A stretch of 64,000 nucleotides of DNA from Octopus bimaculoides. Lineage: Eukaryota. Location: the NCBI RefSeq assembly GCF_001194135.2, contig NC_068984.1, positions 126,270,426 through 126,334,425 of the forward strand, written 5' to 3'. Of this stretch, positions 6,850 through 51,352 are shown one piece after another. Below the pieces are notes generated by a model. The model was not told the origin of the DNA, searched no databases, and worked only from the letters and a program-made list of their open reading frames with translations. Both the position numbers and the translations under genes were made by a program. Each line of letters starts with the position of its first letter. Position 1 is the first letter of the stretch.

Positions 6850-7656
6850 ATGGCGATCCACCTAACAAACCTCGTGTCGAAAACTTTAGACACGCGTATT
6901 CGGAGAACATGTGTGAACATTTTTAGGTTACTGTCGACATTTGATCACCGTTCATCAGATGCCGAAGAATTACCAAAGCCTCCAAAGAAACCGTACTCTA
7001 TGTTTTTTGAATTCTTAGATAGAAATCGCCCAGCGGTAGTTTCAAATAACCCAGGTATGAAAAATCCAGAAGTTATTAGTTTGATATCGAACATGTATCG
7101 TAATTTGTCTGAGGCCGACAAAAAGCTTTTGAAAGAGGAATCGACAAAAAGATTCCAGGCTTATAAGGAAGAATACGTTAAATTTAAGGCATCTTTATCT
7201 CCACAACAACTCCAAGCGATGACTGTGTTATCTCAGAAGAAAAAGGCCAGTCGCTTAAAAAGAGAAAAGAAGCGTGCTGAAAAGAAATACGGTCATCCAC
7301 AGAGGCCAATCAGTTCTTACGGCATTTTTGTACGGGAAAATAAAGGAAAACGTGGAAACATGGGTTTTATAGAGTTTTCCAAATACTTGTCACAAATGTG
7401 GAAAGAAATGCCAGATAATGAAAAGTCTGTTTATCATGATATGTCTATGGCCGAGAGAGAGAGATACGCTGCTCAAATGGTAGACTGGGAACAACTGATG
7501 CTGGAGGAAGGTCGGCCGGAGTTGTTACGAGGTTACACCAAAACGAAGGCAAAGAAAAAGAAAGCGAAAACGAAAGCTAAAATGAAAACAAAAACTAAAG
7601 CTAAGAAAAAAAGAAAAACTAAGAAAACGAGCAAGAAGAATCTTGAGGATTTTTGA
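6850..7656 (+). CDS. TFAM: Mitochondrial transcription factor A, single-exon CDS, 268 aa
   Basis: N-terminal presequence-like segment. HMG box 1 (PKPPKKPYSMFF...FKASLSPQQ), basic linker, HMG box 2 (GHPQRPISSYGIF...WEQLMLEEGRPELLR), collinear with human TFAM as recalled. ATG 6850 has A at -3 and G at +4. Confidence 0.93.
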   Translation: MAIHLTNLVSKTLDTRIRRTCVNIFRLLSTFDHRSSDAEELPKPPKKPYSMFFEFLDRNRPAVVSNNPGMKNPEVISLISNMYRNLSEADKKLLKEESTKRFQAYKEEYVKFKASLSPQQLQAMTVLSQKKKASRLKREKKRAEKKYGHPQRPISSYGIFVRENKGKRGNMGFIEFSKYLSQMWKEMPDNEKSVYHDMSMAERERYAAQMVDWEQLMLEEGRPELLRGYTKTKAKKKKAKTKAKMKTKTKAKKKRKTKKTSKKNLEDF

Positions 7657-7976
7657 TCTGCAATGTTTGAAAGTTTTGCGATCGTCTTAGAGCATTCTAT
7701 TTGAACAAGTAGGAAGTTATATTTTTAATTTGTTTTCATTTAATAATCTATCTAGCTATCTTATTATATACAAGAGCAGTATTAATTCCGAATAGCAATC
7801 TGTATATCTCAACGGGGATATACGGATCTTTTCTGTTTGGCTTTCACTTTTTGAAATTTTAAAATTTAGTATAACGATGTGATTTTTGATGCTGAATCTG
7901 ATGTTGCTGTTATTTTATTGTTCCAGAAAATTTTTAGGAAAATGTTACAGCGGTTTAAAGTTTGATTATTTTTACT

Positions 7977-8371
7977 GGTAATTTTTCAGATAGGTTAGAT
8001 TTGAAAAGGTAAATAAAAATTAAGGGGGAGATAAGTAGTAAAAGAAGGGACGAATCAGTCTAAGCGAAATCGTGGACTATCATTCAATTAGGAAATGTTG
8101 GAGACAACATTCTTCAGTGATTGGCACGGCGTCGACTAATGAATATGTATACATGTGAAAATTGTAATTCACCATATGGCCTTACTACATGTGCTGACGT
8201 TACTGATGGAGAATTATGGCACTGCAAGCGTTGTAAAAGGGGCAAATCTTTTCGTTTCCGTTCATTTTTTGAGAGGTCATATTTCGCCAGTGTTTAGGTT
8301 GTGAAAAGTAACTTCAATTATCTCCCCCTTAATTTTAATTTTTTTTAATCCAACCTAACTGAACAATTACC
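7977..8371 (+). mobile_element. Merlin-type DNA transposon, internally deleted, retaining the N-terminal zinc ribbon
   Basis: About 55-bp imperfect TIRs starting GGTAA, with a perfect 19-bp inner block. Flanks ATTTTTACT / ATTTTTACC (9-bp TSD, 1 mismatch). Internal LQ*LARRRLMNMYTCENC...DGELWHCKRC...SFRFRSFFERS. Confidence 0.8.
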
Positions 8372-8574
8372 ATTTTTACCCCCATCAGAAACAGGATTTG
8401 GAAGCTAGCATATTCTGCTAGCTTTCATTTAAAATGAAAAGCAATATATTACGACGATATAAGTTGTAAGAAGTTTTGAAATTTTAATAAGTTTAAATGA
8501 ATATATTTAAGAGATGAGGAATTATGTACATTATTTACAATTGACGGATATTTGTCCTCATCTTGTTTGTTGTT

Positions 8575-8618
8575 AACACGTTTCGGCTGATATACCCTCC
8601 AGCCTTCATCAGGTGTCT
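8575..8618 (-). ncRNA. Minimal hammerhead ribozyme, copy 1 (short deletion near the cleavage site)
   Basis: Minus strand GACAC-CTGATGA-A-GGCTG(gagggtatat)CAGCC-GAAACGT-GTTAAC. Confidence 0.6.
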
Positions 8619-8769
8619 TGGGGAAATTTCGAACCTAGGTTCTCATTCCTAATATTTCCATTGATGTCTAATGTCGGCTCCGTACCAATTAGATAATACA
8701 GTTCTATATTTAAGAGATGAGGAATTATTTACAATTGGCGGATATTTGTCCTCATCTTGTTTGTTGTTA

Positions 8770-8816
8770 AAACAACGTTTCAGCTGATATACCCTCCAGC
8801 CTTCATCAGGTGCCTT
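8770..8816 (-). ncRNA. Minimal hammerhead ribozyme, copy 2
   Basis: Minus strand GGCAC-CTGATGA-A-GGCTG(gagggtatat)CAGCT-GAAACGT-T-GTTTT. Canonical core with palindromic ACGT stem III. Confidence 0.65.
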
Positions 8817-10127
8817 GGGGAAATTTCGAACCTGGGAATGAGAACTCAGTGAATAACAAAATTAGATCCATCATGAAAAATTACAAAAAATACCAAATTT
8901 GAAAATTTTCACTCAATTTCAAAATCTTTGACAGCAATGGAAAAGACCCATTAGTTTTTTTGTCAGATAAAAGAATGAGAAACAAACGTTTGAACAGGCA
9001 TGTAAACAATTTAAAAACGAAAAATCTTCAACAAAATATTTTTGTGAAAAAATTACAAAAAAGCAAGGTATATGTTATGCTGTAGTAGTTCAGTTCATGA
9101 AAACAAAACATTTTTTGTAGCAAAGTTCAGAATATAGGTATTGATTGTAGTAGTTTTAAGCAGACAACAGCTTGGTACCAATGTGTCTGGCTTTCGATTT
9201 GCTAAAATTACCAAAAATTTGCAAAATTTAAAAGTTATTAACTTTTTGTTTATTAATTTATGGCAAAAATGAATTCCATTTCCATAATTAGCATACAAAT
9301 CTACTTCAATACACCAAATTTGAAATCAACTGGAACAAAATTAAAGGAACAGAAAAGTGAAAGTCAACCAAGAAAGATCTGGATATACCATAAGAAAGCC
9401 ACAATACTGTGGTATACATCTTCAGAAAGTGTCTCGTATGGATGTATAGTGCTAAAAAGTGTACAAGTAGCAGCAGCTGTTCCTGCTAGATATGTTTCAT
9501 GTGCTACTGGTACTTCTGTGCTTTTTTAGCACTATACTTCTATGTGAGGTTCCTTTTCCAGACAAATAGCACAGTATTGTGGCTTCCTTACAAGTATATC
9601 TATCCATGTTAAGATATACATATATGTGTGTGTTTCGAAACGTCTAGATAGAATAGAGACAGCTGATGAAGGGATATTCCAAGGGGCTTTCCGTTTTCCT
9701 ATGTGTTCGTTCCGTTGTCTGTAGTTTATTGTTCTAACGTCCTGTACCCTGATATGCATGTATATACACATGTAGATGTAAGTATGTACATATATGTGTG
9801 TATACATGTATATATATTCTTTGTATTATTATATATANNNNNNNNNNATAAGCATTTTAGTTTGCTTGAAGCACTGTAATACTGAAGAAAGAAAAGAAAA
9901 GAGAGAATAAGAAAGCTTCTTTCAATGCTGAAAGTTTTACAAAACCTTTATATTTCAGGTACAAAGACCCATCCTCAGACAGAAGCAGTCTGGATGCACC
10001 TATTACATTACCTTACTCAAACTTGTCAGTGTTAATGCTGAAAAGTTTGAGTAAGGTAACAGAATTGGTGTGACTGGACATTTGTAAAACTTTCTGCATT
10101 GTTGGAAGCTTTCTTATTTTCTTTATG

Positions 10128-10173
<46 letters not shown>

Positions 10174-10954
10174 AACCAGAGTATATGTCAGCCCAGTTAG
10201 AGGATCCCTTCTCTTGACCATACCTGGCACCATCAGTTGGTTTAGGCACTGTTTTGAGCAGAATAATATTAAGACTATTGAAAATGTTTTCTTAAACAAA
10301 TAGTATTCACTTCATGGATTTCTCTGATTTGCATGTGTTATTGTCAAACTAAAAAAAGATTCACCGAGTTGTAAAATTGTTTGGAGAAATCCGTAAAAAA
10401 AAAAAAAATCTGCCTCTTTTTTTGAGTAAGGAGTCAGGAAAATGTTAGCTGATAGAAAATATGTGAAGATAATCATTCAGTAGACAAACTGATTGAATTT
10501 CGGTGAATGGCTGTGAAGATAAACAAATATTTTGATATAGTTACCTTTTTTGTAGCTCCAAAATACATTACCATCAATTGTTTTGGCTTGACTCCAGTTC
10601 TTATTCATGGTAACGTTTTCATAACAGTTCTCACCAAAGAAGAAAAGAAGTTCCCAATTCTTCAAATTTATAACTTTCTTACCATGGAAGAACATACAAC
10701 TAAAGTTCCCAAATTCAGTACAGATGTTGTTTTTTTACAAATTCTCGTTGATACTATGTATATACAGTATTGCAAAAAAAAAATAATACGAATACTCAAA
10801 CAAAATATCCACATTCAGAGAATTGTTCTCTGGATAATCGCTGACATTTTAACATGCTGAAGTAAGACTCACATCAGAGTGCTGGTCACATATCTTATAC
10901 ATACATACAGACATCCTGGATTAGATCCACAATTGTTTTCTCTTCAGACTGGTG

Positions 10955-11090
10955 TTATGAAGGGCATCCGGCTGTAGAAACTCTGCCAAATCAGATTGGA
11001 GCCTGGTGTAGCCATCTGGTTTCACCAGTCCTCAGTCAAATCGGCCAACCCATGCTAGCATGGAAAGCGGACGTTAAACGATGATGATGA
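10955..11090 (+). mobile_element. Family D repeat (RTE-type 3' tail ending in (GAT)n)
   Basis: GAAGGGCATCCGGCTGTAGAAA...CCCATGCTAGCATGGAAAGCGGACGTTAAACGATGATGATG. Related copies at about 13650, 23010, 47130, 47700, 47945 and 53435. Confidence 0.7.
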
Positions 11091-11269
11091 TCTCAAAACA
11101 CTTTCACCCTATTCAGTTACTGTCTCTTTACAAAGCTCAAGTAAGTTTCACTTTGGAGTATTGCTCAGATATTTGGGAGAATACTGCTACTTCACATACT
11201 AACATCCTGGATTGCATTCAAAAGCAAACCATTCAGTTAACTGGCAAAAATTCACTCAAAATAAGATGA
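11091..11269 (+). mobile_element. CR1/Jockey-like LINE ORF2 C-terminal remnant
   Basis: LLSLYKAQVSFTLEYCSDIW...ILDCIQKQ resembles the LYKxxVRPxLEYCxxxW motif downstream of RT. Confidence 0.6.
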
Positions 11270-12975
11270 CAGAGATGTTATTTCTTCTAGGTTTTTAAAA
11301 AATTTCTGCTGACTTCTTTTGTACTTTTGAGCTTGCTAGATGAATACCCCTCTCCCCTAGGTATCACTCTTTTTGTCCTTATACAGTTTTTACATCCTAC
11401 CACTCAACCGTTTTTCCAGTCTTTTCTTCTGGCATAACTGCAGCCCTGCATTTATTAATAGGTTAAAACATTAAAAGAAAACAAAGCAATTCTTATTTTC
11501 ATCTTTTAGATTTATTATTTTCTAGACTACACTTAGCATTTCTAGGATGAAGAACCCACTTCTTTCTCTCAAACTCACATACCTGTGGGTATGGAACACA
11601 CACATCTGGCACCTCCATCTCACACACGTGTCTAGGATACAGTATATACTTCACACACTCAGGGATACATCTAGGATGCTGCACTCCACAAGCATACACG
11701 CATTTATGACAAAGTGTCTACCTCATGCACACACCTCTCGATTAGTACATACATACACATGCAATGAATTACCAATGTCACACATGCATATGCATCTAGA
11801 ATGGAGTACCCACCTTATTCACGTTTACGTAGAAAACTGCATCTGAAATAAATCATCTACTTGTGACAATGAAATTTTATTCAGTAAAACTTTTGAAACC
11901 TGTCCACAGTTTAACTTTTACTGTAGAAGATGTGAATGTGTCGAAAAAAGCTATGGAAACTGTCTCTGTGTTCAGTTAACAAATAAATGAATTATATTTT
12001 TACCTAAATTAGTTTCTTGTATGCTTAAGTATTTCAACTTTAGTAAAATATGAAATGAAAAAGACAAACTTTTCAATTTGATATGAGTAATTGTGTTACA
12101 TTTTATACCAACGATAAAAGTTAGTGACATGTTGAACAATGATTATAGAAAGAACAGAAATTCACATTTTTTCTTAGCTGTTTTTTCATAGGGTTCCACC
12201 TGCTTAATATTAGCCAGGATATATTTTATGGTGGAGGGAATATATTTGATTTTAAAAAAAAATAACTTCTATTCAGTCATTTGTTTTAAAATGACTATAT
12301 TTAAATTAAAGCCATCCATCACAATTTTATTTCTGAACCTATAATGATTATTTTACTAAATTCCTAATTATTTCCAAAATTAATAGAAACAACTAAGCAT
12401 TGTTTTTGATTAGAAATATGGTTATGAGGGAATTAATTTATTACAGTATTATATTCCATATAAAGATTGAAATCTAGTCTATGACCATTTTTTAATTTCA
12501 TTAAATATGTGCAATCAGTTGAACCAAAGACATTTTCCCACTCATTTATGACCCATTTATTTCACTCCTGTGTGAAAGTTTATTTTTATTTTGAAAAAAT
12601 TATGTGAAAATTTGCTCAAAATTTTCTCTTTTGTGCTCCGACTTTTTTTTCTAAATAAAGATTTAAGACTTGATTCATTACTTTTGAAACCAATTTATTT
12701 ATGTAGATGGCTGTGTGAAGAAAAAGTTGAAAGATGAATGATAGTCTTTTATATTTATTTAGTTTTTAAATCATCCTTTCAGGGCATCTTTCAGACAAGT
12801 CCAATTGGCATTCAGCTTCAATATCTGTTTTGGAAAATCTTATAATTGTATGAGTGAAGGCATGTTTAAATCAATATGTATAGAATAATTAAAGCTGAGA
12901 GTTCATATGATAAATGTGTGTATCTATATATGTCGATATATATTTATATATATATATACACACACNNNNNNNNNN

Positions 12976-13018
<43 letters not shown>

Positions 13019-16000
13019 TACAACAACAACAAAGATAGAGAAAGGTATACTAAATACCATACAAGAGAAATTTATTGGAAATATCTTTGCTTTCAGATAA
13101 AGTAATGAAATGTCTTGTGACAGTAGTGACTGACTCCAAATGAGAAGGGAAGATGATTTCAAGAATCAAGAATTGATATATCATTAAGGGAAAGATGATA
13201 TTTTAATCCTGGAGACAAGAGGACAGCTGTTGGCACATTTGTATCCCATTGGCCATCAGCAACACAGAAGTTGTCCTATCTTAACTGCAGCCATAAATAC
13301 AACTTAGACATCAATAAATGAATTTATTTTGTATGTTATTTGGTACACCTTTCTTTGTTGTTATTGTGCAAATTTATGCCACTAGCCATTCTGATTTGTT
13401 TGTCTCAGTTCATTTTCATTTTAACTATGCCAATAGATACCTTAGCCCATAAATGTTCTCTACTGTTTTTAGATATTGCATTTGTTGATGAAATGAACAG
13501 ATTATGCAATAATGAACAAAATCCTGAAATGTGATTTTGCACAGTTTAAATTTACATTGACAGATGATGCTTAAGAATGCATATGCAAATGTGAGGAAAC
13601 AAGGTGTTGACCTGCAGAAACCTGCAATTTATGTTGGTCTATCAGCCTACAGACCACATTAATTACAAGGATATATGGATTATCACAATCGTTTTTGTAT
13701 TAATGTTCATGTTTGCATGGGTTAGACAGATTGAGGAAGATTTTCTACAGCCAGATGCTCTCCTTGTTGCCAACCCTTACATGTTACGAAGCAAGGTAAT
13801 ATTTCCCCACAGCCAGACATGTTTTCATGGAAAATTGGAAACAAATGGCACTGTTTACATGAGTTAAACTCACAACTATCATGCAATGTCAAGGCAAGCA
13901 GACATACATATATGCATATATATGATAGTCTTCTTTCAGTCTTCATCTACCAAATTTAGTCACAAGATTTTTGGTTGGCCATATGCTATAGTACAAGACA
14001 CTTGCCCTATGTGCCGTGCAGTGAGACTGAACCCCAAACCACGTGGTTTGTAAGCAAGCTTCTTAACCACACAACCAATAACCCTTGTAGGAACAAATCA
14101 AAGTGAGAATCATAAAATATGCCACTGAAATTGAAATGTTAACCTAAGTTTTGTATTGTCCTATAATTACTGGTGTGTTCTAATTTAGCGCATTGTACGG
14201 AAAGTTGAAATGTTTAGATTTGGGTTACGAAAACTAATTTTTTTTCAGGAATCTGCTCAAGTCTCTTGTGATGACTAAGAAAGTCAAGGATCACTAAAAG
14301 TAATGCTTAGGATGTGTATATTGGATGTCACCAATTGTAATGGTATAATTGGTTTAGATATAAAATTTGACTATTATTGGTAGATTAGCATAAAGTTTGG
14401 TGGAGGCTACACATGACAAGTTGAGAAGGCTGCATGTTGGTAATTTCAGGATTCTTGAAATAAATTGACATCTCCGTAGATGTCTTGTTGGCTCTGTGCT
14501 GATTGGATAGTACTTTTATAAATTCCTCATTTCAGAAATAGAGAATTGTATTATCCAATTGGTATGGAGTTGACATAAGGCATCAAAGATTTATAAACCT
14601 TAGAAATTCACACTGATACTGCCTATGGGCATAGCATAGTAGATAAAGGCTTTGAAATGCAGTGCAATCATGTAGAGGCTCTGAGTTCAATCTCAGGCAA
14701 GGTACTAAAGCGAATCACAAGACACCAAAATGTAGTGAAAACAATAATCAAGATAAGGACACCACTTTTATTCAATCATTAGCAATTTTAATTACACTCT
14801 TATTTGAGTTGGAAGATTACAAATGCTAGTCTGTTAGAGAATTTCTGGTTGTTGTTGAACATGGCTCACTAAGTTAATATGAAAGGAAGCAGATAGTAAT
14901 AAAGCTCATGAAAGATTTGCCATTGATAAGTTGGTTGATAGAAAAAAAGAGTGAGAAAGGCAGCAAGCTGGCATCTTTACGTTCTGAGTTCAAATTCTGC
15001 CGAGGTTGACTTTGCCTTTCATTCTTTTGGGGGTCGATAAATTAAGTACCAGTTGTGTACTGGCATCGATCTAATCAACTGGCCTCCTCCCTAAAAATTT
15101 CGGGCCTTGTGACTAAAGTAGAAAAGTAAAAATTCATGAGAGAAATTACTGCTCTGAAAGTTGCAAAGTAGAGAGGATAAGAGGGGCATGTTACAACCAC
15201 CAAATGATGAGAGAAAAAGAGACATAGTAACTCTCTGACAGTGCTGAAGAAAGAAGGGATATTTTGTTAGAAATGTCTTGTTTTTATATTTGATCTCAAC
15301 TAAGAAATAGGTCTGTATAACAATGAAAATTTGGTAAGTTATCTGGGTTGAACTGAATGAGACAGGGAGTGGGGGAGGGGGAAGAATAGCTTGTATGCAT
15401 AGATGGCCATGATTTTACTTAGCTTGATGTGTCTTCTCAAGTATAGCAAATTACCAGAAGTTGCAGTCCCTTCTCATCTTTTCATACTTCTTATATACGG
15501 TTATTCCACCTCAGCTTTTGAAATGATGGGAATCTTTTTATGAAAAAAAGTATTTGGGAGAATTTATGATGTTTTTAACCATCTTCCCTCACCACTTTCA
15601 CTGGACCGATTTGGGCCCATTTTTTTGTTTGCACTACGCTCACATAAACCATGGGATAAGCCTTTTCAGTAAAAAATAAAAAAGCAAATATTTACAGACA
15701 GAAAGGTGATTTAAAGGAAATTTGACTGTTGTTTCTAGCACATCCCATGACCACCTCGTTTCTTCTTCACATGTATTGATGTTTTTCAATATTTCTCTCT
15801 ATAAAAACATTTATGCTATTAAAAAAAAAAATTTGGAAAATTTACATTTTCAACCTCTTCCTCCCATTGTTTCTGTTTGTAATTTTAAAATATTGGAGAG
15901 AGCATAAGGTCATTCCTGGGATTTTAAATCCAGTGATTAAAAAAGAGGTATGCAAAAGTTAATTTATCGTCTAATTTATTTTAATAACAACCTACTTTTC

Positions 16001-16329
16001 TGTTAGTTAATATATTTTTTCTTACACATGCACAGACTTGTTTGATTCGGGGGCGGGGGTTAGAAATTCAAATTACAATATTTTTTCTAACTTATAGCCC
16101 AGCAATGGACCACGCGTGTGTTACTTCTGCATCATCATTCCATAAAATGGGTTTATGGTGAGAAAATATTAAGATGGTCGTGGAATGTGCTAGAAACAAC
16201 AGCAAAGCCTCCTTTACATCACACACCCTTTCGTCTGAAAATATTTACAATTTGTTTTCTTTTACTGAAAATGCTTCTCCCACAGTTTTTAAGTGCAGAG
16301 TACAAAAAAAAAAAAAAAANNNNNNNNNN

Positions 16330-20370: not shown

Positions 20371-20374
20371 TTTT

Positions 20375-36093: not shown

Positions 36094-36140
<47 letters not shown>

Positions 36141-40982: not shown

Positions 40983-41879
40983 GTAACTGGTACTTATTTA
41001 ATCGATCCCGAAAGGATGAAAGGCAAAGTCGACCTCGGCGGAATTTGAACTCAGAACGTAGCGACAGACAAAATACCGCTAAGCATTTCGCCTGGCGCGC
41101 TAACGTTTCTGCCAGCTCGCCGCCATCGAGATACTTAATTGACAACTTTCGTCGTCGTTTCTTTTTTTGTTCACTTTTCAGTTCATGCATGGGTTTGATG
41201 GAATTCATTGAAACAAACTTTCAACGGTTAATTGCCCTTCCTGTTACCAACCTTCACCTGTTTCCAAGCTAAGTAATATTTCCGCATGGCCAGACATATT
41301 TTTCACGGAAGATTAACATTAAATGACATAGTTTGCATGAAACTGACGCTCGTTCACAAACATCGCGTAATGTCAAGACATGGGACCATTCTCTTTCTCT
41401 TACTCGCGCGCACATTTATATACACACATACATGTATGTGTAGTAAGAAGTTGCTGTCCAGTCACATAGTTTTGAGTTCAGTTCCACTGCATGGCACTTC
41501 AGGAAAGTGTCTTCTATTATAGCCTTAGGCTGATCAAAACTTTGTGAGTAGACGTGGTAGACGGAAACTGAAAGAAACCTGTTGCTCGCGCGCGTGTTTC
41601 TGTCTCCTTGCCTTTACATCACATGATGTCTGGTAATGGGGAAATATTATCTATCCTACAAACAGGTGAGTGTTGACTACAGAAAGGGCATCCTGCCGTA
41701 GAAAATCCACCTCGACAAAATTTCGTTTGACCCATGCGGACATGGAAAAGTGGACCTTAAATCGATGAAAATAAATATAGTTAACGCACGAAACTCTCGG
41801 ACGTTGAGTCACTCTGTTACTTCTGCTAGATATTAATAAAAACATACATATACTCATATTTCGACTTATTTTAGAACAT

Positions 41880-42406
41880 GGTTGAGTCCATAAAATAGGA
41901 TTTGACTACACCTCCTTTTAGAGCATAGTTTAAGCTATCATTTCTTGGAAGAAAGTTTATGTTCCTATAACCTGTGTTAATTCTGTAACCCTTTAAAATG
42001 GAAGATAAGAAAGTTCATTTTCGGCACTTGGTTCTTTTCTTTTTCCGTAAAGGGAAACATGTCTCACAAGCAACCAAAGAAATATGCGCAGTTTACGGTT
42101 ATGTTTCTTTATCCGAAAGAACTGTACGGAAGTGGTTCGCAAGCTTCCGAGCTGGAGATTGTAGCCTTATTGATAAAGAGCGATCAGGCAGACCATCCAC
42201 TACAGATGATGACCAAATCAAGTCATTGAGAATAACCCACATTACACAACCCGAGAATTGGCAGAAAGCCTCAACCTATCAAAATCCGTCTTTCATGAGG
42301 ACCTGGTAAAGCTTGAGTACACAAATCGCTACGATGTTTGGGTACCACATGAGTTGAGTGAGAAGAACCTTTTGGAAAATCGGCACGAACTTTTCGGACA
42401 ACCCAT
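41880..42406 (+). mobile_element. mariner element remnant (N-terminal HTH, frameshifted, deleted up to the 3' TIR)
   Basis: MEDKKVHFRHLVLFFF...ERTVRKWFASFR...ERSGRPS, then VWVPHELS. TIR AAATCGGCACGAACTTTTCGGACAACCCAT followed by TA. Confidence 0.85.
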
Positions 42407-43881
42407 TAGTTGGGAAACTAGTTTCTTAATTGAACAGCCATGTCAAGGGAAGCAACTCTGAAATCCAAATTGATTAAAGATTGAATGTGGTCGTGCTGTA
42501 GAGTGTGTCTGGTAAACATGGTGACAAACTCTAGGCACATTTCTATGTCATTAGAACTCTTTGGAACGTGTAGTCCTACATATACATAGCAAGCATTAGA
42601 TTGATTGAGAAATTATAGAGATTTTGAATGAGAAGATATTTATTGATTAAGCAGTTAGGTAATTTAATATCTGCCTCAATGAATTCCTCTGGCCCATGCA
42701 AGCATGGAAAAGTGGATGTTAAAATGATGATGATGGTTATTTATTAAAGAAGAAACAAGCAAAAATGTAGCTTAACTTGAGAGTTATTCCAAAATTCCGT
42801 TAAGAGAAGGAATATGTGTCTCTGTGCGTGCACGTTTACATATACCAGTGTAAATTGCTGTAAATACCTTTTAATGTTTCCGTCTGTAAAAGGGAAGTAA
42901 ACTTCTGTTGGTTCTACTTGGGGAAGGTTCCGTCTCTACCATACATTCTCCTCGCTCAGTAATCTTTCATGACATTTCCTTGTTCATTATGAGGACAAGT
43001 GTGCTACTATCTTTCCATATACATTTCTTTTCAATGATAGTTTTGCACTCAGGGATATCTGATGTCATTGATCAAACACACACACACACACGTTTGCACA
43101 CACACACACACACGTATACGCACATACGCACGGACATATACACACGCACACATGCTGATAACATCCTTGGGGAATGAATGCATGAAGCAATGTTGAATGA
43201 AATGTTTTGCTCAGAAACGCAACAAAACTTCTGCCGTAGATTATTACCCACAATCAATGAACTGACACTGTTATATCTTGCTGACCCTGCCAATATAGAG
43301 TTATATGTACCAATCGATATAAACACGAGATCTATCCTCTTGCGGTGTTGCAGGGTATATCGTAGGACATAACTTATAGATGAAGCTATTTTCCTTCACA
43401 TTTATCTGACTTTCAGCCATTTATTGGTCATTCTTGTTCAATATATATATATTTTTTTAATCGACCTTTTTAATCTTTAATGATTGTTAATTGGTGCTTC
43501 TCCCCATTTTCTGCTTATCAACTCCCTAACATTATTTCAGACTGAAAAAATAAGACAGCTACAGGTTAGTTTTGCATAGTTACCTCCCTTTAATTAAAAA
43601 AAAAAAATAATAATTGTAACTATCCTGAAATGACTTGGTACATAAAATTTTCTCCTGATTGTCAACGTATATAACAATGTCTCAGACCGAAAATAGACCC
43701 AACTCAAGAGAACCATGTTCGGCAAATTGGTATCTTGAAAGTCAGCGTTGGCGTTTATTTTGTCTTGCCATCTGAAGTCCCATATCGTTGTTCTTTAACT
43801 CTGAGTGGTTAATTTTCCAGTCACCTTCTTCGACAATCAAAGACATAATGTCATCTAACCAAAAATTAAATTTACAGTAAC

Positions 43882-44050
43882 AGGCGCAGGCGCGACTGTG
43901 TGATAAGAAGTTTGCTTTCCAACCTCATGGTTCCAGGACAGTTCCACTGCGTGGTACCTTGGACAAGTGTCTTCTACTATAGATCCGAGCTGACCAAAGC
44001 ATTGTGAATGGATTTGGTAGTTGGAAACTGAAAGAAGCCTGTCGTATATA
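43882..44050 (+). mobile_element. SINE family A, 5' part
   Basis: Family A head and core. Confidence 0.75.
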
Positions 44051-44702
44051 TATATACTTATTAAATTTTAAGTCCGTTATTTATTCAATCGGTCTCTTTA
44101 TATATATATATATATATATATGTATAAATNNNNNNNNNNNNNNNNNNNNNNNNNNNNNNNNNNNNNNNNNNNNNNNNNNNNNNNNNNNNNNNNNNNNNNN
44201 NNNNNNNNNNNNNNNNNNNNNNNNNNNNNNNNNNNNNNNNNNNNNNNNNNNNNNNNNNNNNNNNNNNNNNNNNNNNNNNNNNNNNNNNNNNNNNNNNNNN
44301 NNNNNNNNNNNNNNNNNNNNNNNNNNNNNNNNNNNNNNNNNNNNNNNNNNNNNNNNNNNNNNNNNNNNNNNNNNNNNNNNNNNNNNNNNNNNNNNNNNNN
44401 NNNNNNNNNNNNNNNNNNNNNNNNNNNNNNNNNNNNNNNNNNNNNNNNNNNNNNNNNNNNNNNNNNNNNNNNNNNNNNNNNNNNNNNNNNNNNNNNNNNN
44501 NNNNNNNNNNNNNNNNNNNNNNNNNNNNNNNNNNNNNNNNNNNNNNNNNNNNNNNNNNNNNNNNNNNNNNNNNNNNNNNNNNNNNNNNNNNNNNNATAAC
44601 GAGCTTAAAATTTAATAAGTACTGGGATCGATTCGTTCGACTAAAATTCTTCAAGGTAATGCCCCAGCATGGCCACTATCTGCTGACTAAAAACAAAGTA
44701 AA

Positions 44703-45020
44703 CAATGGCCCAGTGGTTAGGGCAGCGGACTCGCGGCCTGAGGGTCGTGGTTTCGATTCCCAGACCGGACGTTATGTGTGTTTATTGAGCGAAAACACCT
44801 AAAACAAAAGCTCCACGAGGCTCCGGCAGGGTTGGTGGCGACCCCTGTTGTACTCTTTCGCCCCAACTTTCTCTTACTCTTTCTTCCTGTTTCTTGAGTA
44901 ATGCTGCGATGGACTGGCATCCCGTCCAGCTGGGGAGGAACACATACGGCATAGAAACCGGGAAACCGGGCCCATGAGCCTGGCTAGGCTTTAAAAGGGC
45001 GCATAAATAATAAATAAAAA
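44703..45020 (+). mobile_element. SINE with a family C head and a different 3' module
   Basis: Matches family C to about 44890, then TGCGATGGACTGGCATCCCGTCCAG...AGAAACCGGG and an A-rich tail. Confidence 0.75.
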
Positions 45021-45439
45021 GAAAGTTCACTATCAAAATAAGCTATGTAATTGGTAATTTAAGGGGCATAACTGGGTATATTATATTTTGACGTTTATCT
45101 CCCTTGCCTTTGTGTCGCGCTTGTCTACCGAAGTTTTTCACTTTATTCTATGTGCGATATTTTTACCATATTATCAATTTAGCAAATTCACCAGCATATA
45201 TTGGATTCTTGATGAATATTCCCCTAAAAAATCTACAAGAAATAAAAATATTAAATTTTACCGCTGAAGCTGATTTCATTTAACCTTGGATAAGGGTTTA
45301 AACTAATGACTTTCTTTCACCAAGGGACATGTCATTATTTCTTATAGGTTATTATAGAACAGTAAGACGTGTTATTAGTTAATATAAGTAATGAGCAGGT
45401 AGAATCATTAGAGCGTCGAAAAAAATTTTTTATGGTAAG

Positions 45440-46400
45440 ACAAATTTGATAGGAGGCTTCTCAATTCTAGGTTTGTTCCCACGTCTGAAATTTCTTTTCT
45501 AATTCTTCTATAGATTTAACTTTAAGAACCAGATTATTAGTATATATGAGTTCCCAGGGACAGTTTATCTTGATTTTATTTTTGAAGGCCTGGAGGATGA
45601 TAATGATGAATAAGAGAGGGCTGAGGGCTGAACCTTGATGGACTCCCACATTCATGCTTATTATTATTGCACTTATTATTGACTCTCACTTTATGAGTCA
45701 CGAAAATTTTTGAACATGCACAGGAAGGACGTAGCCACCCAACAACCATGAGAATTTTGCTCATACATTAGTATTTTGTGCAAAAAAAAAATCAAGGTTT
45801 GATACTTTTTGACTACATCAGATACTGAGCACGGCACCCTGTCAAATGCTAGGTACAGTGGCTTACTCTGAGCTAAGTTATTCCCTGCAGTTACCTCACT
45901 AGGGAAATAACACCTCTACTACTTTATTCTCAGCATAAAGCTGAACTGCATTTCATCTAGTTTAATTCTGCTTCTGATCGATTATGTTATGACTCTTTCC
46001 AATATCTTCATTGCTAGGCCCAATAATGTGATTTCTGTGAATTTCCTCTTTCTGATGCATCTCTTTTACCTTTATAGCAGTTTACAATGATATTGCTATA
46101 CCAGCTATTTGCCATTACACCTTCCTGTATTATCTTCATAACTATTTTGGTGACAAGCATGTGTCCTACTTTTCCACATATTTTGAGTACCCTGCAATTA
46201 TTCTATATGGGCCAGCTGATTTTCCTACCATCATATCCCTCATTGCTTTATTTACTATACTGCTGTCAACTTGTATTGCTGCCCACTCTGTTGGTCAACA
46301 TGAGGTTGATCCCCTTTACTCCATGCATTGTCTTCACTGAATTCCTTTCACTGTAGCACTTCCATGCTTCTTGGGAGAATTTACAAAAAAAACAACAACA
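45440..46400 (-). mobile_element. RTE-clade LINE reverse transcriptase remnant
   Basis: GKSAGP..., YKGKRDASERGN, MKILERV...LDEMQF, KPLYLAF and NVGVHQGSALSPLLF, with stops and frameshifts. Confidence 0.85.
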
Positions 46401-46570
46401 GACGAGGACAGGTGGTGTAAACAACAAAAAGATGTATTAGTTTAACGCTCGGGAATACAGAAAGTCTTTAACGTTTCGAGCTACGCTCTTCAACAAAAAG
46501 AATACGGAGAAAACAAGGAGAAAAACACGGAGAAAAAAAATTGAATGTTTTGGTCAGCGATCTATCATGG
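46380..46570 (-). mobile_element. Second Penelope-like terminal repeat with a hammerhead-like motif
   Basis: Homologous to 49625-49934. Minus strand CTTT-TTGTTGA-A-GAGC(gta)GCTC-GAAACGT-T-AAAG. Confidence 0.5.
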
Positions 46571-48177
46571 CGACTTCTTTCTTGATACCAGTATATAGAG
46601 CAAGTATGCTCTATCCTTCTGGATACACTTCTTACTAATGACATCATTGTTTTCCCTGACATACTGTTTTGTAATCTAGAATACCTGGTGTCTCTGTTTT
46701 TCATGTGGCAGAACATCTCTAAGTGTACCTGACACCTAACTTCCGTTCTACTTACTGGTTAATACTTTTTGTTTCCACCTTCCTTCCCAAATTTTCAAAA
46801 TCTGTCTCTTAGCTTTCATATACGTGTGTGTGTCTGTGTGAATGTTTACAAAAACTATGCCGAACTATAGATGGTGATATTATCTTTTCCAGTTAGCCTG
46901 CAACTGGTGATGTTAGTTGATATTTCCTGTCAACAAATCATTTGCTAGCTCTGTGCTCTTGGATTCTTCTTGAATTAAAAAAATCCCTTACTTGAAAAAC
47001 AGGTAAGAATTGACAACAGGAAGTGCATCTAGCTGTAAAAATCTTACCTAACCTATGCAAGCATGAAATAACAGATATCAAGCAAGACAAATGATACACA
47101 TCATCATTAAAAGTGTGTCACATCATCATCATCATTTAACATCCATCTTCCATGCTGGCATGGGTTGGATGGTTTGACAGGAGCAGGCAAACCAGAGGAC
47201 TGCACCAAGCTCCATTGTCTGTTTTGACATGGTTTTACAGTTGGATGCTCTTCCTAACAACAACCACATTACAGAGTTGACTGGGTGCTTTTTATGTGGC
47301 ACCAGTATGAGTGAGGTATGTTTTGGCATGGTTTTCATGACTGGATACTCTTCCTAATGCCAATCACTTTTCAGAGTGGACTGGGTGCTAATGAAATAGA
47401 GCCATTCCCTACAAGACATTTTAGAGGAAATAGTCCTCAGATAGGAGAGTTGGCCTGAAATGCCTGCATCAGAAGGGACTTCATTAAAGACACCCAAGGG
47501 TCAAGTGGTGTTGTTAAACCAGCTTCCAATGCTGGTCACAGCTGAACCATTAGATCATAGGCCTACTGAATCCCACTCTGCAACACCTTGAGCAAGTGTT
47601 TTTTTCCCTATATCCCTGGGCTGACCAAAGCCTTGTGAGTGGATTTGGTAGAAGGAAACTGAATGAAGCCCATCATGCTTGTGTTTGTGTGTACCCTTGT
47701 CTAGTCATTATCTGATGGTTGTAAATGAGCATCATTGTTATACAGGTGAGGTTGTTTATTTCAAATTTTCTGTAAAAAACATGTCTGGCTTCGAGAAAAT
47801 ATTACCTTGCTTGGAAACAGATGTGGGTTGGTGACAGGAAGGGCATCCTGCTATTGAAAATCTGCATCAGCAAATTCTGTCTAACCAATGCAAACATAGA
47901 ATAGTGGAATGTTAAATGATGGTGATGATGATTATATATATCATCATCATCATTTAATGTCCATTGTCCATGCTAGTTTGGGTTGGACAGTGTGACCAGA
48001 GCTGGCAAGTTGGGGAGCTGTACCAGATTCCAGTTTAATTTGGCCTGGTTTCTACAGCTGGATGCCCTTCCTAATTCCAACCAAAACCAAGGAATAAAAT
48101 AGAAGAATAAAGGAGTAAAAGTAGTTAGAAAGATATAGGCAGGAGAATAATTTTCACAACTCCTCTTTTTCCAGAGG

Positions 48178-48228
<51 letters not shown>

Positions 48229-49234
48229 CACACACACATACGTGCATGCACATGTGTGTGTGTATGTGTATGTTCTATATTTTCTGTATAGAGTTCTTTT
48301 CCGAATTGTAGTCTTTTCAGGTGTTTTTCTGAACTATAAATTGTGTGTACATACAGTCATACATGCACACACGTGTGTGTGTGGAAATACTCAACAAAGT
48401 TACATCTATTTCATTGAAAACCTCTCCAATTTCTTGATCATTTCTTGAAATACAAAATATAATGGTATTGTTAAAAAAAACCCCACAAACTGCAGTAACT
48501 GTCATTGACATGGTGCTAACTGGTTCTTTAACAAGCCATTCCAGGTCAAGGACAAGTTACCAATTCCAATACCAGTTCTTCACTGGAAAGTGGTAAACTA
48601 GCAAGAGATTTCTGTCACTTTACATCTGAGATTAAAAAAAAAACAGAAAAAAAAACAAATAAAATGTTTAAATAAAAATACAAATGAAGAAACAAAAAAA
48701 ACTTGTCATCCATTTACTACTTTATAATTTTGACAGCACTATCTTGTTTTTGTTGCTGTTCTAGTTATTGATGTTACCCACAAACAGCATTGCCAGCAGT
48801 AATTTCAGTTGTCATTCCAACAAATGCAGTGTTGTTGTTGTTAGTCTTTTTGTAATGGTTGTTGTTACTTTTCTTTATCACTTGTACAATTTGTCATTGT
48901 TGTGTCTGTCAGTGTTGCTTTTGTCATTGTTGTTGCTGTTGTCATTGTTATTTTCTTTTGTTTTACTTGTTTCGGTCATTTGACTGCGGCCATGCTGGAA
49001 CACTGCCTTGAAGGATTTTAGTCAAACATATCAACCCCAGTACTATTTTTATTTCTTTATTTTTCTATTTATTTTTTGAAGTCTGGTACTTATTTCATTG
49101 GTGTCTATTCCTGAACCACTAAGTTAATGAGACATAAACAAACCAACAGTGGTTATCAAGTGGTAAGAGAACAAACACAGACACAAACACACATACATAT
49201 ATGTCATACACACACACACACACACACATTTTCT

Positions 49235-49620
49235 TTTACTTTAGTCATTTGACTGTGGCCATGCTGGAGCACTGCCTTTAAAGGGTTTTAGTTGAAGAAA
49301 TCGGCCTCAGGGCTTATTCTTTGTAAGCCTAGTACTTATTCTGTTGATCTCTTTTGCCAAACCATTACGGAGACCTAAACACACCAGCATCAGTTGTCAA
49401 GTGATGGTGAGGGGACAAACACAGATGCAAAGACATGCACACGTAAATATGTATACATCTATACATACGACAGGCTTCTTTCAGTTTCCGTCTACCAAAT
49501 CCACTCATAAGGTTTGGGTCAGCCTAAAGCTATAGCAGAAGACACTTGCCCAAAGTGCCATGCAGTGGGACTGAACCTGGAACCATGTGATTTGGAAGCA
49601 AGCTTCTTGCCACACTGCCA
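49235..49620 (-). mobile_element. SINE family A
   Basis: Reverse-complement match to family A. Confidence 0.8.
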
Positions 49621-49624
49621 TATA

Positions 49625-49934
49625 TGTATAGTTGAAATTTACTGAAAAACAAAAAATGAACAACAAGCAGGTGTATTAGTTTGATGCTCGGGAAAGTGAG
49701 AAAGTCTTTTACATTTCGAGCCTACACTCTTCAACGGAAAGGAATAAGAGAAAATAAACAGAGAGAGAATGAAAAAAACTTATATAAAATACAAAATGGG
49801 ACAAGAACTCAAAACATCCAGACAGTTAGGTGATACAAAAAAGGGACAACAAAACATCCAGATAGATGATACAAAGAAAACAAGGATGGGTCTTTCGGAG
49901 TTTTCTTTCCTCAGTCGAGTTCCAGATTATCTTT
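49625..49934 (-). mobile_element. Second Penelope-like terminal repeat with a hammerhead-like motif
   Basis: Minus strand CTTT-CCGTTGA-A-GAGT(gtag)GCTC-GAAATGT-A-AAAG; runs into the N gap. Confidence 0.5.
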
Positions 49935-50859
49935 NNNNNNNNNNNNNNNNNNNNNNNNNNNNNNNNNNNNNNNNNNNNNNNNNNNNNNNNNNNNNNNNNN
50001 NNNNNNNNNNNNNNNNNNNNNNNNNNNNNNNNNNNNNNNNNNNNNNNNNNNNNNNNNNNNNNNNNNNNNNNNNNNNNNNNNNNNNNNNNNNNNNNNNNNN
50101 NNNNNNNNNNNNNNNNNNNNNNNNNNNNNNNNNNNNNNNNNNNNNNNNNNNNNNNNNNNNNNNNNNNNNNNNNNNNNNNNNNNNNNNNNNNNNNNNNNNN
50201 NNNNNNNNNNNNNNNNNNNNNNNNNNNNNNNNNNNNNNNNNNNNNNNNNNNNNNNNNNNNNNNNNNNNNNNNNNNNNNNNNNNNNNNNNNNNNNNNNNNN
50301 NNNNNNNNNNNNNNNNNNNNNNNNNNNNNNNNNNNNNNNNNNNNNNNNNNNNNNNNNNNNNNNNNNNNNNNNNNNNNNNNNNNNNNNNNNNNNNNNNNNN
50401 NNNNNNNNNNNNNNNNNNNNNNNNNNNNNNNNNNNNNNNNNNNNNNNNNNNNNNNNNNNNNNNNNNNNNNNNNNNNNNNNNNNNNNNNNNNNNNNNNNNN
50501 NNNNNNNNNNNNNNNNNNNNNNNNNNNNNNNNNNNNNNNNNNNNNNNNNNNNNNNNNNNNNNNNNNNNNNNNNNNNNNNNNNNNNNNNNNNNNNNNNNNN
50601 NNNNNNNNNNNNNNNNNNNNNNNNNNNNNNNNNNNNNNNNNNNNNNNNNNNNNNNNNNNNNNNNNNNNNNNNNNNNNNNNNNNNNNNNNNNNNNNNNNNN
50701 NNNNNNNNNNNNNNNNNNNNNNNNNNNNNNNNNNNNNNNNNNNNNNNNNNNNNNNNNNNNNNNNNNNNNNNNNNNNNNNNNNNNNNNNNNNNNNNNNNNN
50801 NNNNNNNNNNNNNNNNNNNNNNNNNNNNNNNNNNNTTCCAACTCACATTTGCCACCCCA

Positions 50860-50926
50860 CCTCTAGCAGCAGCAACACCACCACCACCCTTACTACTACT
50901 ACTACCACCACCACCTGCACCATCCT

Positions 50927-50959
<33 letters not shown>

Positions 50960-51080
50960 CATCACCGCCTATATCATCCTTACTACTGCTACCATCACCA
51001 CCTACATCATCCTTACTACTACTACCCCCATCCCCACTACTACTACTACCCTCACCCCATCCCCACTATCTCCCTACTCA
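50860..51080. repeat. (ACT)n/(ACC)n trinucleotide-based repeat
   Basis: Seen directly. Confidence 0.9.
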
Positions 51081-51247
51081 AATAGCATACATAGTCTAAA
51101 GATGCAGAAAGTAAACAAACAAATCAGAATATAATTATGTAATCTTGTAATCTTGCATTCAATTTTAAATGTTTTGTTAAGTGTTTATTCCTCATGTTTT
51201 GTTGTTGTTGTTGTTCTATCTTTTACAGCAGAGAACCGAAGAGAAAG

Positions 51248-51352
51248 ATGTTACGTGTTGCTTTAGGAACAGCTGTTACCGTGGCGCCAATGGTAATCTT
51301 CTTCCATGACAATATAGGTTTCATTGCAAAAGTTGAAGGAGCATCAATGCAG
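51248..51352 (+). CDS. IMMP2L: Mitochondrial inner membrane protease subunit 2 (peptidase S26), first coding exon only
   Basis: MLRVALGTAVTVAPMVIFFHDNIGFIAKVEGASMQ: hydrophobic anchor plus the catalytic Ser motif VEGASMQ. Acceptor TTTTACAG at 51228; donor CAG|GTAAAG directly after Q, matching the vertebrate exon end as recalled. Confidence 0.88.

What the first reader, a model, noticed from the sequence alone, without database searches (positions are those of the whole stretch)
6850..51352. Three consecutive, co-oriented nuclear genes for mitochondrial proteins: TFAM - SLC25A3 - IMMP2L
Seen: every recognisable host gene in this 64 kb is on the + strand and encodes a mitochondrial protein (mtDNA packaging/transcription, phosphate import, inner-membrane peptidase). 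Known: the human orthologues lie on different chromosomes (10, 12 and 7), and coleoid genomes are heavily rearranged with new microsyntenies. Inference: this may be a lineage-specific, co-regulated mitochondrial gene neighbourhood, although chance adjacency of three genes is possible.
Basis: partly seen in the sequence, partly recalled or inferred. Interest (0 to 1): 0.75.

Follow-up and report, generated by a model that had tools for sequence, protein, structure and literature searches.

The report
Three adjacent octopus mitochondrial-protein genes
Three genes for mitochondrial proteins really do sit side by side on one strand in this Octopus bimaculoides region, but the arrangement is young, about as common as chance predicts, and shows no sign of shared control, so it is ordinary.

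Summary
The window is Octopus bimaculoides chromosome CM046604.1. On the + strand it holds an intronless TFAM-like ORF (6850-7656), a complete six-exon SLC25A3 (17662-30016) and the first coding exon of IMMP2L (51248-51352). The rest of IMMP2L lies beyond the window. Only transposon debris lies between the genes. Eight of the 11 assembly gaps are bridged collinearly by gap-free O. sinensis and O. vulgaris assemblies, and both species keep the same order and orientation.

The trio is lineage-specific, but nothing indicates co-regulation:
- The spacers are 10 and 21 kb of repeats, and there is no shared promoter geometry or motif.
- Random gene order predicts 0.9-4.4 such triples per genome.
- The three Octopus species are too close (dS about 0.25) for shared order to imply constraint.
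- The octopod Argonauta hians lacks the TFAM-SLC25A3 adjacency.

In Argonauta, a chiton, an abalone and an oyster, SLC25A3 instead lies head-to-head with PDHB, another mitochondrial gene. No PDHB was found at that position in Octopus, where TFAM lies upstream of SLC25A3. The best reading is chance juxtaposition after a lineage-specific rearrangement. Interest is low. The conserved PDHB-SLC25A3 pair is the more interesting by-product.

The parts
6850..7656 (+). TFAM-like gene. The CDS is intronless and encodes 268 aa: an N-terminal basic presequence, HMG box 1 (aa 45-113), a linker, HMG box 2 (aa 150-214) and a Lys-rich tail. The stop codon is at 7654-7656.
   Evidence: Pfam HMG_box and HMG_box_2. 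Best PDB match is human TFAM, E 3.7e-25, gapless over aa 41-234. The O. sinensis orthologue is named TFAM-like. dN/dS is 0.15-0.18 against O. vulgaris and O. sinensis.
17662..17785 (+). SLC25A3 (mitochondrial phosphate carrier) exon 1, holding the start codon and presequence.
   Evidence: Splice model. Product 100% identical to XP_014784829.1. About 250 bp of the 5' flank is conserved with Argonauta.
21068..21372 (+). SLC25A3 exon 2.
26584..26765 (+). SLC25A3 exon 3.
   Evidence: It is joined to exon 2 across gap 22274-22283 in transcript L002.
27971..28143 (+). SLC25A3 exon 4.
29208..29318 (+). SLC25A3 exon 5.
29856..30016 (+). SLC25A3 exon 6, with the stop codon TAA at 30014-30016.
51248..51352 (+). 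IMMP2L first coding exon (35 aa: transmembrane segment and the start of the catalytic Ser box, GASMQ). A splice acceptor lies about 20 nt upstream of the ATG, so a 5' non-coding exon lies further upstream. The exon is followed by a gt donor. All other exons are outside the window.
   Evidence: Sequence read. 100% identical to the N-termini of XP_014784824/5 and CAI9722216, which are named IMP2. Exon 1 plus exon 2 gives a weak signal peptidase I match, TIGR02227 E 1.3e-3.
4669..5803 (+). Decayed pogo/Tigger-type DNA transposon ORFs upstream of TFAM. This is not a host gene.
   Evidence: DDE_1 E 1.7e-5. ORFs listed.
41998..42309 (+). Mariner (Mos1-type) transposase fragment in the SLC25A3-IMMP2L spacer. 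This is not a host gene.
   Evidence: HTH_48 E 6.9e-19. Adjacent HTH fragment.
7657..17661 (.). TFAM-SLC25A3 spacer of 10.0 kb, made of repeats and microsatellites, with gaps at 9838, 12966 and 16320. The equivalent spacer is 19.7 kb in O. sinensis.
   Evidence: Collinear with O. vulgaris L003 and O. sinensis L011/L010. No gene is called there.
30017..51247 (.). SLC25A3-IMMP2L spacer of 21.2 kb, made of LINE, mariner and SINE debris, with gaps at 39593, 40652, 44130 and 49935.
   Evidence: 30017-39013 is collinear with O. sinensis L010 and 47717-51496 with O. vulgaris L009. 39.0-47.7 kb was not independently covered. Only transposon domains were found.

Best explanation
These are three independent, ordinary housekeeping transcription units: TFAM-like, SLC25A3 and the 5' end of the very long IMMP2L gene. 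A rearrangement in the lineage leading to Octopus brought them next to each other. That they all encode mitochondrial proteins is most likely coincidence. Each gene presumably has its own promoter.

**Shown**
- The gene identities, their order and their orientation.
- Continuity of the assembly across most gaps.
- Presence of the same arrangement in O. sinensis (TFAM-SLC25A3) and O. vulgaris (TFAM...IMMP2L).
- Its absence around SLC25A3 in Argonauta and in non-cephalopod molluscs.
- The PDHB head-to-head SLC25A3 arrangement in Argonauta and three non-cephalopod molluscs.

**Inferred**
- PDHB head-to-head with SLC25A3 was the ancestral molluscan state, and Octopus lost or stretched it.
- The genes are regulated independently.
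- The adjacency has no selective significance.
For: **Identities:**

**Same order and strand in other Octopus assemblies**
- O. sinensis CM016862.1: TFAM at 1,941,295-1,942,098 and SLC25A3 at 1,961,799-1,980,916.
- O. vulgaris OX597817.1: TFAM at 168,320,386 and IMMP2L at 168,409,506.

**Recency:** intergenic DNA still aligns at 85-93% identity and TFAM dS is 0.25-0.28.

**Derived state**
- PDHB sits on the opposite strand, 1.1-5.3 kb upstream of SLC25A3, in Argonauta, Liolophura, Haliotis and Saccostrea.
- It is PDHB rather than BCKDHB: E 4e-56 against 5e-16.
- None of these species has an HMG-box or S26 gene within 10 kb of SLC25A3.

**Chance:** 0.9-4.4 triples, or 0.2-1.1 co-oriented triples, are expected per genome.

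**Geometry:** the spacers are 10.0 and 21.2 kb of transposon debris, and there is no shared NRF-1-like motif.

Against: - Expression, chromatin accessibility and Hi-C contacts were not examined, so co-regulation is unproven rather than disproven.
- Decapodiform cephalopods were tested only within 10 kb either side of the cuttlefish SLC25A3. That is too short a reach in a genome with such large intergenic distances, so a coleoid-wide block is not excluded.
- SLC25A3 has a mitochondrial-protein neighbour in every mollusc examined: PDHB elsewhere, TFAM in Octopus. That could hint that a mitochondrial partner is favoured.
- The location of Octopus PDHB is unknown. If it lies just upstream of TFAM, the run would be four genes long and chance would be a poorer explanation.
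Confidence: 0.7

Rival explanations
1. Functional neighbourhood. The three genes share a chromatin domain or enhancers, so that mitochondrial biogenesis genes are expressed together, and selection keeps them adjacent.
For: All three are co-oriented, encode mitochondrial proteins and have no intervening host gene. The arrangement is retained in three Octopus species. SLC25A3 also has a mitochondrial neighbour (PDHB) in other molluscs.
Against: The arrangement is absent in Argonauta. The retaining species are too closely related for this to be informative. The frequency matches chance. The spacers are long and repeat-filled and differ about two-fold in length between species: 10 against 19.7 kb, and 43.6 against 88 kb overall. 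There is no shared motif. Novel cephalopod microsyntenies are generally not co-expressed.
Confidence: 0.1
2. Insertion model. An intronless TFAM copy, arising by retroposition or a small transposition, landed in the ancestral PDHB-SLC25A3 intergenic region in the Octopus lineage. PDHB therefore still lies further upstream, giving a four-gene mitochondrial run PDHB-TFAM-SLC25A3-IMMP2L.
For: The TFAM CDS is a single exon in all three Octopus species. It lies upstream of SLC25A3, on the side where PDHB lies in four other molluscs. It is a functional gene under purifying selection.
Against: No PDHB coding sequence occurs in the window, or within 10 kb upstream of TFAM in O. vulgaris or O. sinensis. 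There is no poly-A tract or other retrocopy scar downstream of TFAM. Whether TFAM has introns in other molluscs was not established. No second TFAM locus was seen, although the search had limited sensitivity.
Confidence: 0.17
3. Scaffolding artefact. The adjacency was created by mis-joining contigs across the N gaps of the O. bimaculoides assembly.
For: There are eleven gaps in 64 kb. Three of them (39593, 40652, 44130) are not covered by an independent assembly. O. vulgaris has 88 kb between TFAM and IMMP2L against 43.6 kb here.
Against: Gap-free O. sinensis and O. vulgaris assemblies are collinear with window 1542-39013 and 47717-63305. In O. vulgaris, TFAM and IMMP2L are on the same chromosome, in the same orientation and the same order. 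A transcript joins the SLC25A3 exons across gap 22274.
Confidence: 0.03

Closest known systems
Cephalopod-specific microsyntenies (Schmidbaur et al. 2022, PMC9023564)
   Same: Genes that are unlinked in other animals are juxtaposed in a coleoid genome after large-scale reorganisation. There are three genes with no intervening gene.
   Different: The published definition requires the block in Euprymna and at least one octopus. Here it is shown only in the genus Octopus, it is absent around SLC25A3 in Argonauta, and it was not detected within 10 kb in a cuttlefish. The paper's supplements do not name these genes.
Conserved head-to-head (divergent) gene pairs with a short shared intergenic region; here PDHB and SLC25A3 in molluscs
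   Same: Two nuclear genes for mitochondrial proteins are kept adjacent. SLC25A3 is one partner.
   Different: The pair is divergent, with 1.1-5.3 kb between the CDS starts, and it is conserved across four molluscan classes. The Octopus trio is tandem, has 10-21 kb spacers and is confined to one genus. No PDHB lies at that position in Octopus.
Nematode and tunicate operons (my own knowledge: polycistronic clusters, often of housekeeping and mitochondrial genes)
   Same: Co-oriented consecutive genes with related functions.
   Different: Operon genes are about 100-1000 bp apart and are resolved by trans-splicing. Here the spacers are 10 and 21 kb of transposon debris, so an operon is excluded by geometry.
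Human IMMP2L locus with LRRN3 nested in intron 3 (PMC3565204)
   Same: Octopus IMMP2L is also a very long gene: the intron after the first coding exon is about 30 kb. In O. vulgaris, a single-exon LRR-Ig-(weak FN3) gene of 717 aa lies on the opposite strand just after the second coding exon.
   Different: This lies outside the window. Nesting is inferred because the downstream IMMP2L exons were not located. It is unrelated to the TFAM-SLC25A3 adjacency.

Membership tests
TFAM (mitochondrial transcription factor A) | Two tandem HMG boxes joined by a helical linker of about 30 aa | tested here: met
   Pfam places the boxes at aa 45-113 and 150-214. The alignment to human TFAM is gapless across box 1, the linker and box 2.
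TFAM (mitochondrial transcription factor A) | Closer to TFAM than to other HMG-box proteins | tested here: met
   Human TFAM scores 92 bits (E 3.7e-25), HMGB1 55 bits (E 6.6e-14) and yeast Abf2 36 bits. NCBI names the O. sinensis orthologue TFAM-like.
TFAM (mitochondrial transcription factor A) | N-terminal mitochondrial presequence and mitochondrial localisation | not testable with these tools
   The N-terminal 35 aa are Arg-rich with few acidic residues (sequence). No targeting predictor or experiment was available.
SLC25A3 (mitochondrial phosphate carrier) | Three Mito_carr repeats in a protein of about 350 aa | tested here: met
   Pfam Mito_carr E 1.2e-51 with 3 stretches.
SLC25A3 (mitochondrial phosphate carrier) | Orthology to named phosphate carriers; an intact, spliced, expressed gene | tested here: met
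   100% identical to XP_014784829.1 and 72-80% identical to vertebrate SLC25A3. All splice sites are canonical. A transcript contig, L002, encodes the protein.
IMMP2L (inner membrane peptidase subunit 2, S26 family) | Catalytic Ser box (G-x-S-M-x-P) after an N-terminal membrane segment | tested here: met
   The exon ends ...AKVEGASMQ, and exon 2 continues PALNP in the annotated proteins. There is a weak match to TIGR02227 positions 9-58.
IMMP2L (inner membrane peptidase subunit 2, S26 family) | Catalytic Lys box and the remaining S26 boxes; a domain-level profile match | tested here: inconclusive
   These parts are not in the window. The public Octopus models are truncated at 91-109 aa. Neither Pfam nor PDB gives a hit for the 70-aa fragment. 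The IMP2 name comes from NCBI and UniRef.
Cephalopod-specific microsynteny (definition in PMC9023564) | At least 3 orthologues co-occurring with 5 or fewer intervening genes | tested here: met
   This holds in O. bimaculoides (this window). TFAM-SLC25A3 are adjacent in O. sinensis, and TFAM and IMMP2L are 88 kb apart in O. vulgaris.
Cephalopod-specific microsynteny (definition in PMC9023564) | Shared by a decapodiform (Euprymna) and at least one octopus | tested here: inconclusive
   In the cuttlefish Acanthosepion pharaonis there is no TFAM, IMMP2L or PDHB coding within 10 kb of SLC25A3. The reach is too short for a genome with such large intergenic distances.
Cephalopod-specific microsynteny (definition in PMC9023564) | Absent outside cephalopods | tested here: met
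   A chiton, an abalone, an oyster and Capitella have no HMG-box or S26 gene within 10 kb of SLC25A3.
Co-regulated gene cluster | Shared promoter geometry (bidirectional or operon-like spacing) or a shared regulatory motif | tested here: not met
   The genes are in tandem with 10.0 and 21.2 kb spacers of repeats. No NRF-1-type palindrome lies near any 5' end.
Co-regulated gene cluster | Co-expression beyond that of unlinked genes of the same class; a shared contact domain | not testable with these tools
Molluscan PDHB-SLC25A3 divergent pair | PDHB on the opposite strand within a few kb upstream of SLC25A3 | tested here: not met
   The pair is present in Argonauta, Liolophura, Haliotis and Saccostrea. 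In Octopus there is no PDHB coding in the window, in the 19.7 kb between TFAM and SLC25A3 in O. sinensis, or within 10 kb upstream of TFAM.

The most novel reading that the evidence does not exclude
SLC25A3 sits in an old molluscan 'mitochondrial' divergent pair with PDHB. In the Octopus lineage this pair was remodelled by the arrival of an intronless TFAM gene. If PDHB still lies upstream, Octopus would carry a four-gene run, PDHB-TFAM-SLC25A3-IMMP2L. Such a run is much rarer by chance, and it might share a regulatory domain for mitochondrial biogenesis.
Probability: 0.08. Interest if true: 0.5.

Novelty: already known. Interest (0 to 1): 0.17.

Why it matters
If the trio were a selected, co-regulated unit, it would be a rare animal example of functional clustering of nuclear genes for mitochondrial proteins, and a handle on how coleoid genome reshuffling creates new regulation. 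The evidence points the other way. The adjacency is genus-level, matches chance frequency, and involves three annotated housekeeping genes. Its main value is as a calibration case: a shared functional class among three neighbours is expected about once per genome.

The by-product is modestly useful. A PDHB-SLC25A3 head-to-head pair is shared by four molluscan classes, yet PDHB is not found at that position in Octopus (nor within 10 kb of SLC25A3 in a cuttlefish). This is a concrete, testable example of an older microsynteny that was disrupted or stretched in coleoids.

Tried and rejected
- **Locating IMMP2L from memory.** tblastn with a from-memory human sequence was used only as a lead. It found one exon.
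- **Pfam on the IMMP2L fragments.** Neither the 35-aa exon nor the 70-aa exon 1 plus exon 2 fragment gave a hit. The PDB search also gave none.
- **Word-indexed protein search for the exon.** The exhaustive search then found the annotated proteins.
- **Looking up the window's own 310-aa TFAM model.** It is not on record, so the region left of the window could not be extended in O. bimaculoides.
- **Searching for PDHB coding.** tblastx against the window and against the O. vulgaris, O. sinensis and cuttlefish loci matched only a SINE-like repeat.
- **A weak tblastx hit suggesting an Argonauta IMMP2L exon 7 kb downstream of SLC25A3.** Direct inspection showed it was noise.
- **NRF-1 palindrome and CpG analysis of the 5' regions and of the molluscan PDHB-SLC25A3 spacers.** Nothing was shared.
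- **Retrocopy scars downstream of TFAM.** None were found.
- **Literature.** No paper links PDHB and SLC25A3 by synteny. The supplements of PMC9023564 do not name the genes. No paper lists neighbouring XP_0147848xx accessions.
- **Operon reading.** Rejected on spacing.
- **Hidden RNA genes.** Rejected.


Full report
**What the window is.** The sequence has 36.5% GC and contains 11 runs of N. Locus L001, from Octopus bimaculoides assembly GCA_001194135.2 (chromosome CM046604.1, 126,278,087-126,310,441), is 100% identical to window 7662-40016. That locus is the same assembly, so it is not independent evidence of continuity.

**Gene 1: TFAM-like.**
- A single ORF at 6850-7656 (+) encodes 268 aa.
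- Pfam finds two HMG boxes, at aa 45-113 and 150-214.
- Against all solved structures, the nine best hits are human TFAM. The alignment is one gapless stretch covering both boxes and the linker (E 3.7e-25, 92 bits). HMGB1 scores 55 bits and yeast Abf2 36 bits.
- NCBI names the 92%-identical O. sinensis protein 'transcription factor A, mitochondrial-like'.
- dN/dS against O. vulgaris and O. sinensis is 0.15-0.18, so the gene is functional.
- The CDS has no intron in any of the three Octopus species, and no poly-A scar is visible downstream.

**Gene 2: SLC25A3.**
- Six exons (17662-17785, 21068-21372, 26584-26765, 27971-28143, 29208-29318, 29856-30016) have canonical AG/GT boundaries and give 351 aa.
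- The protein has three Mito_carr repeats.
- It is 100% identical over its full length to 'phosphate carrier protein, mitochondrial [O. bimaculoides]' and 72-80% identical to vertebrate SLC25A3.
- A 1454-nt transcript contig encodes exactly this protein. This proves that the exons on either side of gap 22274-22283 belong to one mRNA.

**Gene 3: IMMP2L.**
- Only one exon is present, at 51248-51352 (+). It encodes MLRVALGTAVTVAPMVIFFHDNIGFIAKVEGASMQ. A polypyrimidine tract and AG acceptor lie about 20 nt upstream of the ATG, and a gt donor follows the exon.
- Pfam cannot score it, and the word-indexed search failed.
- An exhaustive phmmer search found two proteins that carry it at 100% identity, spliced to PALNPEGQRTSDYVFLNKWKAKNHHYIRGEVVSLI.
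- Their sources name them 'mitochondrial inner membrane protease subunit 2-like' (O. bimaculoides XP_014784824/5) and 'Mitochondrial inner membrane protease subunit 2' (O. vulgaris CAI9722216).
- The 70-aa fragment weakly matches signal peptidase I, TIGR02227, E 1.3e-3.
- Exon 2 is not in the window. In O. vulgaris it lies 30 kb downstream of exon 1.
- So the finding's end coordinate marks the end of exon 1, not the end of the gene.

**Anything between the genes?**
- The NCBI annotation calls only SLC25A3 in window 7662-40016.
- The O. sinensis annotation calls nothing else across the whole TFAM-to-SLC25A3 interval or in the 10-kb flanks.
- The O. vulgaris annotation calls nothing within 10 kb of TFAM or in the 10 kb upstream of its IMMP2L gene model.
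- My six-frame ORF survey shows only transposon debris: pogo/Tigger DDE_1, mariner HTH_48, weak RVT_1 and a SINE family.
- There are no tRNA or Rfam hits.

**Gaps.**
- Gap-free O. vulgaris (L003) and O. sinensis (L011) are collinear with window 1542-12838/13187.
- O. sinensis L010 is collinear with 13397-39013.
- O. vulgaris L009 is collinear with 47717-63305.
- Together these bridge the gaps at 6250, 9838, 12966, 16320, 22274, 49935, 54712 and 56143 in the right order.
- Two gaps probably hide sequence. At 6250-6420, O. sinensis has about 1.58 kb where the window has 245 bp. At 12966-12975, the sister species carry 3.4-4.5 kb of extra repeats.
- Gaps 39593, 40652 and 44130 were not covered.
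- A mis-join is still unlikely. In O. vulgaris, TFAM (168,320,386) and IMMP2L (168,409,506) lie on one chromosome in the same order and orientation.
- No gap touches coding sequence.

**Is the trio more than chance?** I assumed 1000-1136 mitochondrial-protein genes among 15,000-33,638 genes (my own figures from MitoCarta and the published octopus gene count). Random order then gives 0.9-4.4 runs of three per genome, or 0.2-1.1 if they must also be co-oriented. The category was chosen after seeing the genes, which weakens the case further.

**Is the trio conserved?**
- It is shared by O. bimaculoides, O. sinensis (TFAM, then 19.7 kb, then SLC25A3) and O. vulgaris (TFAM and IMMP2L 88 kb apart).
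- These species still align in intergenic DNA at 85-93% identity and have dS of about 0.25. Shared order at that distance carries little information about constraint.
- In the octopod Argonauta hians, the gene 5.3 kb upstream of SLC25A3 is PDHB on the opposite strand.
- Argonauta has no TFAM-like coding in the 10 kb upstream of SLC25A3 and no IMMP2L exon in the 10 kb downstream.
- In a cuttlefish, nothing is found within 10 kb of SLC25A3. This is inconclusive given the large intergenic distances.

**The unexpected result.**
- The same PDHB-SLC25A3 head-to-head pair occurs in the chiton Liolophura sinensis (1.1 kb between CDS starts), Haliotis cracherodii (3.5 kb) and Saccostrea echinata (5.3 kb).
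- The neighbour is PDHB rather than BCKDHB: E 4e-56 against 5e-16.
- The downstream neighbours differ between species (laminin, a RING/B-box gene, or none).
- Capitella has a tandem SLC25A3 duplicate and no PDHB nearby.
- The ancestral molluscan neighbour of SLC25A3 was therefore most likely PDHB, and the TFAM-SLC25A3-IMMP2L order is derived.
- No PDHB coding is detectable in the window, between TFAM and SLC25A3, or within 10 kb upstream of TFAM in O. vulgaris or O. sinensis. I could not locate Octopus PDHB.

**Mechanism.**
- The tandem orientation, the long repeat-filled spacers that differ about two-fold between sister species, and the lack of shared motifs all point to three independently promoted genes.
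- Schmidbaur et al. report that genes in novel cephalopod microsyntenies 'do not tend to be co-expressed', unlike those in ancient ones (PMC9023564).
- I therefore favour chance juxtaposition after a lineage-specific rearrangement (confidence 0.7).
- The alternatives are an insertion model with PDHB still nearby (0.17), a truly co-regulated neighbourhood (0.1) and an assembly artefact (0.03).

**Verdict.** All three genes are already annotated. Interest is low.

Noticed in passing
L004 1-10000; L005 1402-10000; L006 1-10000; L007 1-10000: PDHB (pyruvate dehydrogenase E1 beta) lies head-to-head with SLC25A3 in Argonauta, a chiton, an abalone and an oyster, with 1.1-5.3 kb between the CDS starts. 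This looks like a mollusc-wide divergent pair of mitochondrial-protein genes. It is not seen in Capitella, and no PDHB is found at this position in Octopus or within 10 kb in a cuttlefish. I found no paper describing it.
   Followed up: partly
L009 51272-53425 (O. vulgaris, outside the window): A single-exon, 717-aa LRR(x6)-Ig-(weak FN3) gene lies on the minus strand about 7.6 kb past IMMP2L coding exon 2 (about 5 kb past the end of the truncated gene model). No further IMMP2L exon occurs within L009. This mirrors human LRRN3, which is nested on the opposite strand in IMMP2L intron 3 (PMC3565204), and may be a very old nested arrangement.
   Followed up: partly
window 6250-6420: This gap sits about 430 bp upstream of the TFAM start codon. 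O. sinensis has about 1.58 kb between the flanking blocks where the window has 245 bp. Most of the TFAM promoter and 5' region is therefore probably missing from this assembly.
   Followed up: partly
window 12966-12975: This 10-N gap coincides with 3.4-4.5 kb of extra repeat-rich sequence in O. vulgaris and O. sinensis. Either sequence is hidden in the gap, or a transposon inserted in the sister lineage.
   Followed up: partly
window 55-344, 16330-16600, 21618-21976, 25153-25861, 49232-49621, 51499-51914: A SINE-like repeat family of about 300-400 bp is present in many copies on both strands, including SLC25A3 introns and the region just after the IMMP2L exon. It creates spurious ORFs such as ...SFSFRLSNPLTRLWSARGYSRRHLPKV... 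Copies are also abundant in O. vulgaris and O. sinensis.
   Followed up: no
L012 10001-13491 and 15684-16814 (Capitella teleta): SLC25A3 is tandemly duplicated in Capitella. The second copy is annotated as only 180 aa, but tblastn shows nearly full-length coding.
   Followed up: no
window 51248-51352 and public models P0125, P0126, P0128: The public IMMP2L gene models in O. bimaculoides (91 aa) and O. vulgaris (109 aa) are truncated after the second coding exon and end in non-homologous tails. The catalytic Lys-box exons are missing from both annotations.
   Followed up: partly
window 6676-7656: The public O. bimaculoides TFAM model (310 aa) starts at an upstream in-frame ATG. The O. vulgaris and O. 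sinensis models (267 aa) and the sequence conservation support the start at 6850.
   Followed up: partly
whole window compared with O. vulgaris OX597817.1 and O. sinensis CM016862.1: Intervals are much longer in the sister species. TFAM-SLC25A3 is 19.7 kb against 10.0 kb. The SLC25A3 gene is 19.1 kb against 12.4 kb. TFAM-IMMP2L is 88 kb against 43.6 kb. Either transposons expanded there, or repeats are collapsed in the gapped O. bimaculoides assembly.
   Followed up: no
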